This document shows, piece by piece, positions 6,899-63,871 of a stretch of DNA of 63,871 nt. The notes beneath the pieces are model-generated. The model saw only the letters and a list, made by a program, of their open reading frames with translations, ran no database searches and was not told the origin of the DNA. Source of the stretch: Aplysia californica (lineage: Eukaryota); contig NW_004797997.1 in assembly GCF_000002075.1 (NCBI RefSeq), forward strand, positions 193,388 to 257,258, in the 5' to 3' direction. The position numbers and the translations under genes are program-made. How positions within the stretch are numbered: the stretch's first letter is position 1; each line of letters opens with the position of its first letter.

Positions 6899-6970
6899 TT
6901 ACTCTGTCACACTGCATGATCCCTCCAGAATGTCATGCTCAACCTCGGCCAGGTTGTTGAAAGATGTGAC
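6899..6970 (-). CDS. Last coding exon: end of VWA-k (VTSFNNLAEVEHDILEGSCSVTE*)
   Basis: tttcag acceptor, phase 0, C-terminal VWA helix plus Cys, TAA stop. Confidence 0.88.
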   Translation of the reverse strand, partial: VTSFNNLAEVEHDILEGSCSVTE

Positions 6971-7509
6971 CTGAAACAGACGAGACACCATTAGATGACT
7001 GTGTAAAAGCCCGACGTAAGGTATGCACCTATTCCATACAATTTAGACCACCGCCGTCCCTCAGGGATCAGACATGGAGAATCCACTCTACAGAACTACA
7101 CAACACATGAGACAGCCTGGAAATAAAGTGTTATTTGACTGGATTGAAAAGCCCTGCTGAGTTAATAGCAACAACACACATGTATGATACGTAAATTGGA
7201 TTTTGTGAAATTAGGCAAAGGAACAAAAAAATTGAATCTACCACCCCTTCCTCCATGAAGCGACATGTGATATTTTTGGGAACAGAAAAACGTTAATACT
7301 CCCACTTCATTGTTTCAAAGTGCCGATTAATGAGAATATCCCGAGTCAAAGTCGTTCTCTGGTTCAAATGTTTGTAACAAAGGCATCTATCTTAGGGATT
7401 AAGATATTTTAAATAAGCTATGGACAGAATAAAAAGGAAATGATACAATTTTGCAACAAAGGACAGCACTGACAAAAAACTGCACGAATTCTTGACACAT
7501 TATACTTAC

Positions 7510-7706
7510 AGGGAACACATCCTTGACGCTCGATGCAATGCCATTAATTTCGTCATAGTTCTCCAGACCAATGCCAATACCGATGACCTTTGCACCAATT
7601 GCCTTAAGGTCAGTGGCAGCAGGAATGGTGTCCCAGTAGTTGATGTTGCTCTGTCCATCAGTCATGAGAATGACCACATCCTTAGCATTCGGCCTCTCTC
7701 CAAAAC
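7510..7706 (-). CDS. VWA-k exon 2 (GFGERPNAKDVVILMTDGQSN...KDVFP)
   Basis: 197 nt, phase 1 to 0, TDG motif, donor GTAAGT. Confidence 0.92.
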
Positions 7707-9158
7707 CTACAAAGGGGGGAAATACGACGGCAAAAGGTTACACGAGTTCTTGAAAGGAGAAAAAATATCGCCAAACAACAAATCCCTTGTGCAGACAAAG
7801 ATAAGTAAAATTTGATTTTCCGTTCCGTTATCTTGTCAATGGCTATGGAATGTGTTTTCCAATAGCATTCATTTTTATCGCCTTTTCAGTATTTCTGACG
7901 GTCTGACTGTAATAAACCTTCCATGAAGCTTTGTTACGCAGCAAGGGCTTTTTTACTGTATGATCATTTTTATATAAAAAAACCACAACAGAAACAGGAC
8001 TACTTGATATTAAGTAGTTTCTTGTACATGCACATGTGATCACTCTTGTTTATAAACCCCCCCCCCCCCCCCCCCCAGCTATTCTAAAGGAATCTTCAAA
8101 ACATATGCAGCGTATAGCATAGGAATAAACACTGGGCAGCCCCATGAAATAAATATAAATCCGTTTCTCCCTGGCGCGGTTCGTCCATAGAGCACGGTCG
8201 TGCAGTGCCGCCAAAATGTTTTAAATTAAATATTCTATTACGTAAAGCGCCCACAAACATAAAATAAAATAAACCAGAAAAAACACTAGCCAAATGTAAT
8301 ATCAAAAGAAGGTCCCCGTTGGCGCTATAACTGTCATTTTTGTGTCTATATCTGCCAAAGTCCACACACTTTAACTAAACATAATAGGATATTCAACAGT
8401 GGTAACCTGACCTATAAATCGCTCTTTGGGATAACCCAAGCGACGACGACACCCTTTGCCAGTTTGTCGGTACATTAATACTTATAAGTCGGCACATCTC
8501 AAATGTGCTCCTGCCGAATAGTGCTGATGCATAGCCCACAGTAGGCAGTCTAAAAATAAACGCGATAGACTGGACGCTATTCAATGCCAAAAATATGTGA
8601 GCCTCGGAGCAATCCGGCGGAGTGTTCAAGTGAATTATGATTGGTTCATCGTCTCGCCGCTATTTTAAGAGACTCAGTGACCCTGAACCTGAGGGAGGTG
8701 AACGTGACATACTTAAGTCGCCGTCCAATGGGTTGTGCCTAGGCTTTCTCAGTTCATGTTTCAGAGAAAGCCTAGGGTTGTGCCTTTGAAAGGTTTTGTA
8801 GTGGAGTGGTGAAAGTTATTACTGGAGTGTTCAGTTATAATGCAGGATGGACGAATTTGATGTTTAGCTAAAACAGATTTAGTTCTAGAAATCAAAGCGA
8901 CGTGTAAAAAGAATGAAAATAAAAGCACGAGGCCCTCCCTCACCAACCCAAAGATCCTAAAATTATACAACATCTCATTTACTATGCCTTGACAATGTTC
9001 AGCCTGCGATAGCTTAATTGTGCACGCCCCCTTTTTAGACCCACGAGCCGCCCTTGTTTCTCCATATGTGTACTAGAGTCTCCTTGACACACACAAACAA
9101 AGGCAACAAATCAAATGTCAAGAGAAAGCAAATTTGACTGAAAAGAATAACATCTCAC

Positions 9159-9455
9159 CTGGTTGATACATCTGAATGGCCTGTCTCAAACCATCAGCTG
9201 TGTTCGTTGAACCAGCTTGATAGATAGTGGTCTCAATAGCTTCTATCGTGTCCTCAGGTAAAGTGTAACGGTTGAAACTGAAGATGGTCTGAACGTTGGT
9301 GCTGTACGTGATGAGAGCGAAGCGGTGATCCTGTCCTCCAACTGTCAGATCCTTCACCACGGTGGACACGTACTTGAGCATCAGGCCAAAGTTGGTAGGA
9401 CCCACACTGGCCGAGGCATCCAGGATAAAGGCGATGTCTTTGCTGGAGCCGCAGT
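9159..9455 (-). CDS. VWA-k exon 1 (DCGSSKDIAFILDASASVG...GSTNTADGLRQAIQMYQP)
   Basis: 297 nt, phase 1 to 1, MIDAS DASAS, donor GTGAGA. Confidence 0.93.
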
Positions 9456-10129
9456 CTAGAGACACAGACAGGCAGGAAATGAGATGAGAACATATGTTTG
9501 TCTTACAGTGATTCCACCGATCACTTAGCCTTGTCAACATCCCCCAATAAACAAACAAATTCCAACCCAAAACAAAGACAAGATCCCCTTCCCCCCAACC
9601 CCACCCCTAAGTTTTAGTGAGTGTTTTACGGTACTTGCAGCTCAATAAGGTCATATAAGTGCCGAAGATTAGAGGTGTTCCAAGAGAGTAACAAACACAA
9701 AAAGGAGGAGAGATAAGGTCGATAGATGTTTGACAGGAAAGAAGAAGCAAACCATACCAGAGCACCCGCCAACCACCCACCCATACCCCTATAAAAGTCC
9801 AACCCCCTCAAAACACAAAACAAAACAACACAAACCAACAAAAAGAAGCCTATCAAAGTACACACCATGCAGTGATGGAGGGCCAAATACAATCGAGTGG
9901 TTCTTCAACGAAACACTACATGGTGCACACAACTGTAACACACTCTCAATAAGTGTTATGTGTAGGTGTCTTTTTGTATAACATACATATTTGACAAAGA
10001 CAATGACTCTTGAGGCACATTTTACGCCTCAGGTACAGTCATCTTTTTCGTCAAAGACAAGGAAAAATACCAAGCTCTAGATGATTAAGTAAGAGCCCCC
10101 AACATTCGCTTACAGAGCTCACAACTCAC

Positions 10130-61368: not shown

Positions 61369-61741
61369 GCATTGATGTTTGACACACCGTCTGTTACCAC
61401 AATGGCAATGTTGTCTACATTGGGACGGTCTCCATTGGCTCTTGTAAACATTTCGGCCCTCATGGTTTGAAGGGCGTCTGCAGTGTTGGTGCTGCCATAG
61501 CGGTATGGGATATTATCTACTGCATTAAATACATCAGCCTTTGTTCTGTAGGTGTTCATTTGGAACTCAACATGATCTTCTGTACTATAGATAATCACAC
61601 CCACCCTCACACTACCGCCATCAATGTCAGCTTCATACAGGAAATCTTTCACAAAGTCTTTCATTAATTCAAAATTGGGCTCAGTCACACTGGTGGAAGC
61701 ATCCAGGACAAAAACCAAATCAATCTTTGCCCCAGCACAAC
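61369..61741 (-). CDS. VWA-b: single-exon VWA repeat, 3' third lost in an assembly gap
   Basis: CAGAKIDLVFVLDASTS...TDGVSNIN, then the N gap 61269-61368. Confidence 0.9.
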
Positions 61742-62851
61742 CTGCAAAAATTGGATGAAAAGGACTTCCCTATTTATCAGCGGTTAAAATAAAGTTAACA
61801 TTCGAGAAGCATTGCTATATCAATCTAATCTAGGGACATGGGTGCTGGAAAAAACAGTTATGTAAAAGCAATTTTAAAGCAAATTGTAAGTTATAAGTGA
61901 TGTGAGAAACGTGTTGCTTAAACCAAGGCGAAGCCTAGAGGACACACGCATTCTTAGGGTCTATAACGGACACTGTGCAATTCTGGATGTTTCATATTTC
62001 ACCAAGTTCTTTTAAAAGTCAGACCTTTGGAAACATTTTAGGGTCTGGGAGAAGTCCAGACGTTTCCAACATGAATGCTCCTTTCCACTCATAAAGAGCT
62101 TCCTGTATACAAGAAACGTTCACTATAGAGCCATAAGGCAGTCTCAAGTGAAGTCTCTGTAACACATTTAGAGACTGTTTACTACGTCACGTAGAAACAA
62201 TTAGATGGGAAAAGGGGAGGCATTCTGATCTTTCTTTTAAAAAAGAAGTAAAGCATAAAACACTTCATATATACAGTGGAAGTCCTGAAAGTAGAGGTTT
62301 TCCATTCAGACTAGGAAATCTATTTATACTGACCAAAGTAGTTCTAAAACAAAAGAAAACTGTTTTATTATCTAGTTTGGAGACTTTTATGACATAAACA
62401 AGAACGCCGTGGAGTCATAGAGAAGAGCGAGAAATTGGGTTTGAAGCACTGCTATGATTACAAAAGATGACGGTGACAGCGCCAACAGATGTATTGGTGT
62501 TGATCACGACTTTTTCAGTTAAAAAACGATTCCTGTTTCCATAGGTGTTTAAACTAATCAAACTCATGCTTGGTAAAAAAAAGTGAGATATTAGACATAA
62601 CTTCTATACTAAGCTTATAATATTATTTATTGTGCAGGGTGAAAAGCAGAGCTTGTCATGTGAATGTGATAGCATGAAGCGGTGGATGTAGTTGGTATGA
62701 GCAATTTTATAGCGTGTTGAGAAAGTAAAAATACATGCATGAAATGAATTAATAGTACTTCAAAAGAAGTCCGATCTTTTAGAGATTTCGATCTAAATCA
62801 AACCTTTGTGCAAGGAACAGGTGAGAAAATACCCAATAGGTTTTTACTTAC

Positions 62852-62878
62852 TGACTTTTGTCGGGGCTGGTGTGGAAA
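62852..62878 (-). CDS. 27-nt linker micro-exon (VSTPAPTKV)
   Basis: CAG acceptor, GTAAGT donor, phase 1 to 1. Confidence 0.85.
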
Positions 62879-63693
62879 CTGTTTAAAAAGAAAGTAAAGA
62901 GCAAAAATTACATGATTTGTTCAATGTTGAAAAGAACACAATAGGAGACACGTTTGAAAGAAAAACAGTCAAACGGAACGAAAAGTAGAACACTATATTA
63001 AATTCCAAATAACACTGGAAGGGAAGAGGATGTAGAATACGAAAACATAACTATGCCAACAAAGAGTGTTTTAAAACACCAACACATTAAAAAAAAATAA
63101 AGTTGTACAGGGAACATAACAATTTTAAGATTATAATCATTCAACACAGAATAGAATTTACTATCTCAAGTTATTATTGAAATTTCGTTCAGCACTTTAT
63201 AATGTAAAAAGCAAGGACATTCATCTTTCTTTTCAGGAATTATTTTAAAAATGGATGCTAAATTTGAATAAGCTTGTCTCGTCACCGTAGCTCATTTCTG
63301 GACTGTTAACTGTGTAAGAAGGAACATACAAACTTGAGCGAAGTGCTTTACAAAATGTGACTACTCTCCCATGACCTTCTTATACATCGGATTCTCTATT
63401 CTCTTTCCCTTGAATTTTAATGCATCTGACGTTCACCGTGAAGTTAGACGTGCAATTGTTGCCCTCCCAAATTCCCATGTCCCAACTTAATTGTGTAACT
63501 AGGTATACATGACTACTCATTCCATCATTAAGCTTTATCGTAACACTTGCAAGACGTGTTTCAACGTTGGTCTATCTGAAGAGTAAAGGTAACAGAACAG
63601 CAAACTAACCTGTGTCAAAAGTTAAAAGAATCAAGTTTTCTATGCCCTTAAGACTCAGAGAAGAACAATGACATTAATAGTTTATTAAATTAC

Positions 63694-63871
63694 CTCCACA
63701 GAGGGCAGCAAATACATTGTGTCTCAGATCTCTCAACTCAGAAAACTCCTGTACGGCAAATCTGTTTTCATCAAGTGGTCTGCTGGCAATTCCATCCAAC
63801 TCCCGTGTGTCTGTCAGACCAATACCAATGGCATAGATGTGGATGTTGTCTGCACGAGCTTGCTCTGCTTC
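63694..63871 (-). CDS. VWA-a: 3' part of another single-exon VWA repeat (runs off the window)
   Basis: EAEQARADNIHIYAIGIG...FAALCG|GT, near-identical to 54024-54201. Confidence 0.92.

What the first reader, a model, noticed from the sequence alone, without database searches (positions are those of the whole stretch)
6899..63871. Giant modular VWA-mucin-EGF protein with an architecture matching no classical family
Seen: hand-spliced exons give VWA x5 or more, a Thr/Pro stalk of up to 228 aa, VWA, Thr linker, then (VWA-EGF) x4 and a final VWA. No Gly-X-Y helix, coiled coil, TM segment or GPI tail appears in the visible part. Known: matrilins have 1-2 VWA plus EGFs and a coiled coil, collagen VI needs a triple helix, and VWA/EGF proteins are components of invertebrate glues, mucus and matrices. 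Inference: a lineage-specific, metal-dependent multivalent cross-linker with two VWA clusters separated by a glycosylated spacer. Automated annotation would probably mislabel it collagen VI-like.
Basis: partly seen in the sequence, partly recalled or inferred. Interest (0 to 1): 0.8.

Follow-up and report, generated by a model that had tools for sequence, protein, structure and literature searches.

The report
Giant mollusc-wide VWA–EGF matrix protein
This is the rear half of a huge secreted matrix protein (about 25 sticky VWA domains) shared by snails, clams and octopuses; databases mislabel it as collagen VI although it has no collagen helix, and I found no study of it.

Summary
34 minus-strand exons (54590 to 6899) read as 1,899 aa without an internal stop: VWA repeat, VWA E, Thr/Pro stalk, VWA F, Thr linker, (VWA-EGF)x4, VWA K. 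RNA contigs from three studies splice the stalk onto F, and the exon upstream differs between studies.

It is one gene, larger than reported: about 135 kb, a candidate signal exon, 5 basic MIDAS-less VWAs, at least 13 near-identical VWA exons, 25 VWAs, about 5,100 aa.

'Lineage-specific' is refuted. The same cassette, orthologous domain by domain, occurs in Pomacea, Batillaria, Arion, scallops, clams, freshwater mussels, Solemya and (without K) Octopus. Many are auto-named 'collagen alpha-3(VI)-like', and none scanned has a Gly-X-Y run. No characterised orthologue was found.

Notable points: repeats are homogenised within each species, and only in exons. Spacers and valency vary by splicing. 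Domain F, MIDAS-dead and without its disulfide, is conserved between two T/P spacers.

Best reading: a multivalent, cation-dependent connective-tissue cross-linker (0.5); tissue and ligand are untested. Window 14102-16429 is a probable assembly duplicate. Earlier scan notes cover this same stretch only.

The parts
63694..63871 (-). VWA repeat A, 3' part of a single-exon VWA; its 5' part lies beyond the window, past a gap. The gene continues about 78 kb upstream on contig C727.
61369..61741 (-). VWA repeat B, 5' two thirds; the rest is lost in gap 61269-61368
56255..56832 (-). VWA repeat C, interrupted by gap 56442-56541 (not filled; frame across it unknown)
54024..54590 (-). VWA repeat D: complete 567-nt phase 1-1 exon, intact MIDAS (DxSxS..T..D), Cys at both ends, net charge -12
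51257..51307 (-). 17-aa Pro-rich linker exon
   Evidence: consistent with the length of RNA contig X15
49619..50858 (-). VWA E (exons 50858-50782, 50383-50110, 49834-49619), MIDAS intact
   Evidence: clade with Pomacea E, 99
48806..48832 (-). 27-nt stalk micro-exon s0, spliced directly to s6 in run X15
   Evidence: loose end, located
40541..46427 (-). Stalk micro-exons s1-s5 (46427-46362, 45370-45311, 42893-42828, 41026-40967, 40600-40541), from local duplications. s4 joins s6 in runs X7 and X12 (s5 skipped); s1-s3 and s5 not shown directly.
34039..37435 (-). Stalk exons s6 (37435-37250) and s7 (34137-34039), Thr/Pro/Arg-rich; joints s6-s7-F1 seen in RNA contigs of three studies
30699..33611 (-). 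VWA F (33611-33428, 32483-32317, 30914-30699): no Cys, truncated MIDAS, both features shared by orthologues
30299..30376 (-). 26-aa Thr linker exon (GC donor)
27564..29786 (-). VWA G (3 exons), MIDAS intact
26351..26464 (-). EGF 1 (114-nt phase 1-1 exon)
24733..25750 (-). VWA H (2 exons), imperfect MIDAS (Thr replaced); single copy in the genome
21549..21662 (-). EGF 2
17360..20138 (-). VWA I (20138-19907, 19251-19064, 17497-17360), MIDAS-dead, basic (+9); its RGD is not conserved at that position in orthologues
16754..16867 (-). EGF 3
14102..16429 (.). 100% identical duplicate of 16460-18787 (second copy of exon I3 and EGF 3); probable assembly artefact, excluded from the model
11459..13866 (-). 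VWA J (13866-13673, 12225-12087, 11689-11459), MIDAS intact
10130..10243 (-). EGF 4
6899..9455 (-). VWA K (9455-9159, 7706-7510, 6970-6899 with the stop codon), MIDAS intact; C-terminus of the protein

Best explanation
A single-copy, ancient molluscan gene encodes a secreted, non-collagenous, multivalent adaptor of the connective-tissue matrix, about 5,100 aa with 25 VWA domains in this species. SHOWN: the architecture, orthology, MIDAS pattern, absence of helix and TM, and variable splicing of the stalk. INFERRED: (1) The middle array of identical, Cys-flanked VWA domains with intact MIDAS binds many copies of one ligand through Mg/Mn/Ca, most likely collagen fibrils, so avidity scales with repeat number. 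(2) The fixed C-terminal cassette G-EGF-H-EGF-I-EGF-J-EGF-K is a semi-rigid arm making specific contacts (self-assembly or a second matrix partner), with MIDAS-dead, basic domain I as a metal-independent site. (3) The basic, MIDAS-less N-terminal domains bind polyanions or the protein's own acidic repeats. (4) O-glycosylated Thr/Pro spacers set the span between the two ends, and splicing tunes span and valency. It would work like the globular VWA arrays of collagen VI alpha-3, matrilins or mussel PTMP1: a bridge that cross-links and stiffens a collagen/proteoglycan network.
For: Secreted and soluble: signal peptides in orthologues, a candidate 20-aa phase-1 signal exon at C727:335778, no TM segment. 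Position-specific clades F, G, H, I, J, K across classes, SH-aLRT 94-100, with the MIDAS on/off pattern of F-K kept: a core function under old constraint. Present in shell-less Octopus and the slug Arion. Repeat exons dN 0.03 against dS 0.30. The best-scoring single-domain solved relative is mussel PTMP1, E 1e-37 for the whole two-domain chain, called a collagen-binding matrix protein in the title of Suhre 2014 as cited in PMC5597905. That paper reports no VWA+triple-helix collagens in three mollusc genomes and proposes that helix-less VWA proteins cross-link into networks. The repeat exon is held by 20 runs from 7 studies, and runs of one study differ in whether they hold it.
Against: No tissue, localisation, binding or knock-down data for this gene or any verified orthologue were found; run descriptions are coded. 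An intact MIDAS does not name the ligand. VWA/EGF proteins also occur in slug glue (PMC11178922) and in shell proteomes (PMC6641155). O-glycosylation is inferred from composition only. The signal exon is not confirmed by RNA.
Confidence: 0.5

Rival explanations
1. A structural cross-linker of an external secretion (pedal mucus, defensive glue, egg capsule or jelly), where metal-bridged VWA arrays and a mucin-like stalk stiffen a hydrogel.
For: Matrilin-like VWA/EGF proteins are named main components of slug adhesive (PMC11178922). Fast turnover of repeat number and spacers, and derived cationic relatives in Haliotis, fit secretions.
Against: Limpet adhesive candidates listed in PMC7333891 carry vWFD, not this architecture. 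The slug matrilin-like protein on record is 40 kDa. The strict C-terminal cassette is kept across classes with very different secretions.
Confidence: 0.25
2. A shell-matrix or shell-muscle attachment protein that organises the organic framework of the mineral.
For: VWA proteins are abundant in nacre and their RNAi disturbs nacre (PMC5597905). A 'collagen alpha-3(VI)' VWA+EGF protein was found in Perna nacre with 10 peptides (PMC6641155); orthology not tested.
Against: No chitin-binding domain as in Pif/BMSP among the Pfam lists of the orthologues. Kept in Octopus and the slug Arion.
Confidence: 0.12
3. A haemolymph or wound-plug protein: a VWF-like multivalent agglutinin that tethers haemocytes to exposed collagen or microbes.
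For: Giant, soluble and multivalent; domain F lacks the N-C disulfide, like VWF A2 (the A2 comparison is from my own knowledge).
Against: No VWD, C8, TIL or cystine-knot module for multimer formation was seen in the model or in the Pfam lists of the orthologues. The RGD in domain I is not conserved. No expression data.
Confidence: 0.1
4. Two adjacent genes split in the 34-49 kb region, or a spurious join across assembly gaps.
Against: RNA contigs join s4 or s0 to s6, s7, F1, F2. Contig X15 extends 645 nt above s6, equal to s0 + E + linker. Transcript-derived Arion A0A0B7ART5 and RefSeq Pomacea carry E-stalk-F...K in one chain.
Confidence: 0.02

Closest known systems
Unnamed molluscan orthologues: Pomacea XP_025106489/XP_025106479, Arion A0A0B7ART5, Batillaria BaRGS_00006381, Solemya ScPMuIL_017168, Ruditapes LOC132725621, Mya LOC128240703, Mizuhopecten LOC110464458, Pecten LOC117317678, Sinanodonta ACJMK2_013983, Octopus XP_052831912
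   Same: Same order: D-type VWAs, spacer, F, T/P linker, G-EGF-H-EGF-I-EGF-J-EGF-K (K missing in the Octopus and Dreissena models; the Batillaria model ends after I-EGF). Same MIDAS and Cys pattern; His-for-Asp N-terminal VWAs in the bivalve models checked.
   Different: Repeat number (0 in the Arion transcript, 13 or more here, about 18 in Batillaria), spacer length (27-208 aa) and inserts (Ig in Solemya; PKD/REJ-type in Ruditapes, Mya, Dreissena) vary. N1-N3 are much more basic here (+15 to +17). None found characterised.
Collagen VI alpha-3 chain
   Same: Long N-terminal VWA array with alternatively spliced domains (own knowledge); top PDB hit by summed score; source of the database name.
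   Different: No Gly-X-Y helix, Kunitz or FN3; has EGFs; fish collagen VI domains branch apart, 98.
Matrilins and AMACO/VWA2
   Same: VWA plus EGF matrix adaptors; AMACO also lacks a coiled coil (own knowledge).
   Different: 1-3 VWA there against 25 here; no oligomerising tail after K; T/P spacers.
Mussel PTMP1 (PDB 4CN8)
   Same: Molluscan tandem VWA, collagen-binding; E 1e-37 to repeat D.
   Different: Two domains only, no EGF; orthology not tested.
Owenia, Argonauta and amphioxus (VWA)n-(EGF-VWA)n proteins
   Same: The same module grammar.
   Different: 27-46% identity. In the tree the Owenia protein P0143 and Argonauta protein P0131 do not fall into clades F-K, so these look like relatives, not orthologues.

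Membership tests
Collagen VI | Central Gly-X-Y triple helix | tested here: not met
   None in the 1,899-aa model, none seen in the upstream exons N1-N5 and repeats, none of 6 or more triplets in the orthologue models scanned
Collagen VI | VWA domains related by descent to collagen VI N/C domains | tested here: not met
   Fish col6a6 domains form their own branch, 98; one fish protein sampled, quick tree
Collagen VI | Tandem N-terminal VWA array | tested here: met
   5 + 13 or more + 1 VWAs before the stalk
Matrilin | C-terminal coiled coil | tested here: not met
   Stop 3-4 residues after the last Cys of K; most orthologues end likewise. Judged by length; no predictor was run.
Matrilin | One or two VWA flanking a run of EGFs | tested here: not met
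   25 VWA; single EGFs alternate with VWAs
Pif/BMSP shell proteins | VWA plus chitin-binding domain | tested here: not met
   The model is fully accounted for by VWA, EGF and T/P segments; no chitin-binding Pfam on orthologues
Gel-forming mucins / VWF-like adhesives | VWD-C8-TIL modules, cystine knot | tested here: not met
   No unassigned Cys-rich segments in the model; those families are absent from orthologue Pfam lists
Gel-forming mucins / VWF-like adhesives | O-glycosylated PTS region | not testable with these tools
   Stalk is 40% Thr and 17% Pro; glycans not testable
Unnamed molluscan multi-VWA/EGF family | F-linker-G-EGF-H-EGF-I-EGF-J-EGF-K cassette, each domain orthologous by position | tested here: met
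   Best-match order and tree clades, support 94-100
Unnamed molluscan multi-VWA/EGF family | MIDAS-less N-terminal VWAs on the same chain | tested here: met
   N1-N4 group with bivalve N-terminal domains, 97; Arion chain carries N3, N4, E and F-K together
Unnamed molluscan multi-VWA/EGF family | Signal peptide | tested here: inconclusive
   Candidate exon at C727:335778, no RNA confirmation; present in orthologues
MIDAS-type collagen-binding VWA (integrin I, PTMP1) | Cation-dependent ligand binding | not testable with these tools
   Motif intact in the repeats, E, G, J and K; binding needs an assay

The most novel reading that the evidence does not exclude
This is the molluscan functional stand-in for collagen VI microfibrils and a tunable mechanical linker. 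The number of ligand-binding repeats and the spacer length are set by splicing. Domain F, kept MIDAS-dead and without its disulfide between two flexible T/P spacers in all three classes, is a force-unfoldable fuse like VWF A2: it gives hidden length or exposes a cleavage site under load, while the Cys-flanked neighbours stay folded.
Probability: 0.2. Interest if true: 0.72.

Novelty: new variant of a known kind. Interest (0 to 1): 0.42.

Why it matters
Mollusc proteomes and transcriptomes often report 'collagen alpha-3(VI)'; at least some such entries are this helix-free gene. It is one old, conserved matrix gene that annotation breaks into many small 'genes' (Lottia, Plakobranchus). Defining it corrects a common misreading and gives a concrete candidate for how molluscan connective tissue is cross-linked. 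It is also a clean case of exon-limited concerted evolution seen in several lineages. The modules and the general design are familiar, so the surprise is moderate until tissue, ligand or the role of domain F is shown.

Tried and rejected
1. Lineage-specific novelty: rejected.
2. Two genes: rejected.
3. A fifth EGF module from 14102-16429: rejected as a probable assembly duplicate; two similar gap-adjacent duplicates lie elsewhere on the contig. It was not tested with DNA reads because the one read-laying run went to the stalk.
4. RGD in domain I as an integrin site: not conserved at that position in six orthologues.
5. A collagen helix upstream: none seen up to the candidate signal exon, though that region has many gaps.
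6. First word search with repeat D found only fragments because of the length window; long orthologues came from region searches on stored proteins.
7. Literature: no hit for six accession numbers or for three term sets (one search gave only PMC5597905). The slug-glue paper PMC6124484 is not held. The Arion supplements are cut and did not show A0A0B7ART5.
8. The joined model was never sent to a search tool: searches went exon by exon by reference, and the joined sequence was used only in local scripts. No gap was filled.
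Full report
WHAT IS IN THE WINDOW. The window is C727:193388-257258 of a 927,310,431-base, 4,332-contig genome. Homologues place it among gastropods (Plakobranchus 86%, Biomphalaria 80%, Lottia 71% for one exon). The assembly size matches Aplysia californica AplCal3.0 from my own knowledge; no tool confirmed the species. The gene is on the minus strand. I fixed splice sites by hand. From repeat D (54590) to the stop (6899), 34 exons give 1,899 aa with no internal stop. 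All acceptors are AG, donors GT with one GC, and every intron between modules is phase 1. Pfam, run exon by exon, confirms VWA and EGF. The joined model was used only in local scripts and was not sent to any search tool.

GAPS AND ARTEFACTS. The six listed gaps lie in introns. An RNA joint crosses 32873-33036. The F-to-K part aligns to Pomacea at 60% identity over 1,350 aa with no indel at the gap-bearing junctions. Gaps at 56442-56541 and 61269-61368 break repeats C and B; they were left unfilled. Window 14102-16429 duplicates 16460-18787 at 100% identity, starts at a gap edge and repeats a 181-N gap. Two similar duplicates lie next to other gaps on the contig, and no orthologue has the extra module. 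I treat it as an assembly error, not tested with DNA reads.

ONE TRANSCRIPT, VARIABLE STALK. Contigs from runs X7, X12 and X15 (three studies; RNA status is the tool's guess or unknown, but they are spliced at GT..AG) join s6 to s7 to F1 to F2 and continue into F3; X1 showed no spliced contig here. Upstream of s6, X7 and X12 carry s4, skipping s5. X15 carries a 27-nt exon s0 at 48832-48806. X15's contig runs 645 nt above s6, exactly s0 + E + linker, and all three contigs are long enough to hold F3 to the stop plus some 3' UTR (arithmetic, not a direct lay). Pomacea isoforms X10 and X11 differ by a 14-aa stalk segment, and Sinanodonta isoforms by a 54-aa linker and by N-terminal domains. Spacer splicing is therefore shared across the family.

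THE REST OF THE GENE. Upstream on C727 there are nine more repeat copies, 13 in all (8 complete, 5 broken by gaps, 92-100% aa identity). Beyond them lie five divergent VWAs N1-N5 (330.9 to 290.8 kb), all phase 1-1, basic (+6 to +17) and without MIDAS; N1-N4 have His for the first Asp. A 20-aa signal-peptide-like phase-1 exon sits at C727:335778, and a second candidate at C727:293456. Total: about 135 kb, 25 VWA, 4 EGF, about 5,100 aa. H and I are single-copy in the genome.

ORTHOLOGUES. The representative search showed many multi-VWA and VWA-EGF proteins in molluscs, Owenia and amphioxus. Region searches then returned long models. In Pomacea, Arion, Solemya, Ruditapes, Mya, Mizuhopecten, Pecten, Potamilus and Sinanodonta the C-terminal domains match G, H, I, J, K in order, each separated by one EGF and preceded by an F-type domain (56-80% identity in gastropods, 34-55% in bivalves). 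Octopus has F to J, and the Batillaria and Dreissena models are cut short. In a 171-domain tree each of F-K is its own cross-class clade (SH-aLRT 94-100), N1-N4 join bivalve N-terminal domains (97), and fish collagen VI domains sit apart (quick search, N5 unplaced on a long branch). The transcript-derived Arion protein has signal peptide, N3, N4, E, a 126-aa stalk and F-K in one chain with no D repeat. This ties both ends to one gene and suggests the array can be skipped. No non-mollusc protein exceeded 28% identity over most of the H-EGF-I region (word search with a length window, so not proof of absence). The cassette predates the split of gastropods, bivalves and cephalopods. 'Lineage-specific' is wrong, and many orthologues are indeed auto-named collagen alpha-3(VI).

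EVOLUTION OF THE ARRAY. Repeats cluster by species: this genome 96, Lottia 100, Pomacea 99, Plakobranchus 87. Among 8 complete copies here, mean dS is 0.30 and dN 0.03, and 400 nt of flanking intron does not align. Lottia has the same single-exon array, annotated as separate genes. Batillaria has about 18 and an Argonauta protein 25 near-identical copies. Exon-limited gene conversion plus purifying selection is the simplest reading (inference); recent duplication with fast intron turnover is not excluded.

MECHANISM. MIDAS is intact in all repeats, E, G, J and K; it is imperfect in H and dead in F, I and N1-N5. The F-K pattern recurs in the gastropod and bivalve orthologues, and Octopus J has also lost the motif. 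In this protein the repeats, E and G-K each have two Cys, near the domain ends. F has none here, and 0-1 in every orthologue checked, yet the Pomacea F domain is predicted as a normal VWA fold (pLDDT 87). The best-scoring single-domain solved relative is mussel PTMP1. PMC5597905 reports that three mollusc genomes lack VWA+helix collagens and suggests that helix-less VWA proteins cross-link into networks. Hence the best reading (0.5): a connective-tissue bridge with an avidity array for collagen or a similar ligand, a spliced spacer and a fixed C-terminal assembly arm. Rivals: external mucus or egg gel (0.25), shell matrix (0.12), haemolymph tether (0.10), two genes (0.02). Ligand, tissue, glycosylation and metal dependence are not shown. 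The F-as-fuse idea rests on analogy with VWF A2 (own knowledge) and on conservation alone.

COMPARISON AND NOVELTY. It is not collagen VI (no helix), matrilin (no tail, wrong counts), Pif/BMSP (no chitin-binding domain) or a VWD mucin. It works like the VWA arrays of those adaptors. It is a member of an unnamed molluscan family already in databases under misleading names. I found no paper on it, but most subscription journals are not searched. A possibly related protein was seen in Perna nacre (PMC6641155); orthology untested. Four earlier scan notes cover this same stretch: spliced spacer and exon-limited homogenisation agree with my tests, the RGD is not conserved, and RNA uses the first donor of the donor array. 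They were used as leads, not as support.

VERDICT. Real, one gene, larger and older than first thought. New variant of a known kind; interest 0.42.

Noticed in passing
P0288, P0289, P0123 (Haliotis): Derived relatives with 7-20 near-identical, strongly cationic VWA repeats (+25 to +31 each, MIDAS intact in the copies checked), two of them followed by 23-32 EGFs and one VWA: a polycationic counterpart of the acidic array.
   Followed up: partly
G000:C727:293456, minus strand (outside the window): Second signal-peptide-like phase-1 exon between N4 and N5: a possible alternative first exon giving a short N-terminus, as in some bivalve isoforms.
   Followed up: no
window 54947-55026: 80-nt fragment of a repeat exon (86% to D) in the intron above D, with no usable frame or splice sites seen: a likely trace of exon-to-exon conversion or a decayed copy.
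   Followed up: partly
window 32137-32338: 36-nt tandem array, each unit copying the F2 splice donor; RNA contigs use the first donor at 32316.
   Followed up: partly
window 42783-42764 and about 46320-46300: 20-nt AG..GT pieces just after s3 and s1 resemble micro-exon s0 but are not a multiple of three; probably decayed copies.
   Followed up: no
G000:C727:305040-306084 and 185430-186948: Further 99.5% identical duplicates beside 100-N gaps; the first duplicates the last exon of N3. Same artefact type as window 14102-16429.
   Followed up: no
window 34137-34132: RNA contigs have one Thr codon fewer at the start of s7 than the assembly: an in-frame length polymorphism in the stalk.
   Followed up: partly
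P0290, P0292, P0333, P0334, P0200: Bivalve orthologues carry Ig (Solemya, Mytilus) or PKD/REJ-type domains (Ruditapes, Mya, Dreissena), with long non-VWA inserts before F where gastropods have the T/P stalk; Sinanodonta has two near-identical loci.
   Followed up: partly
G000:C338:394792-395325: A 1,060-aa open frame holding a VWA at 39% to repeat D, elsewhere in the genome.
   Followed up: no
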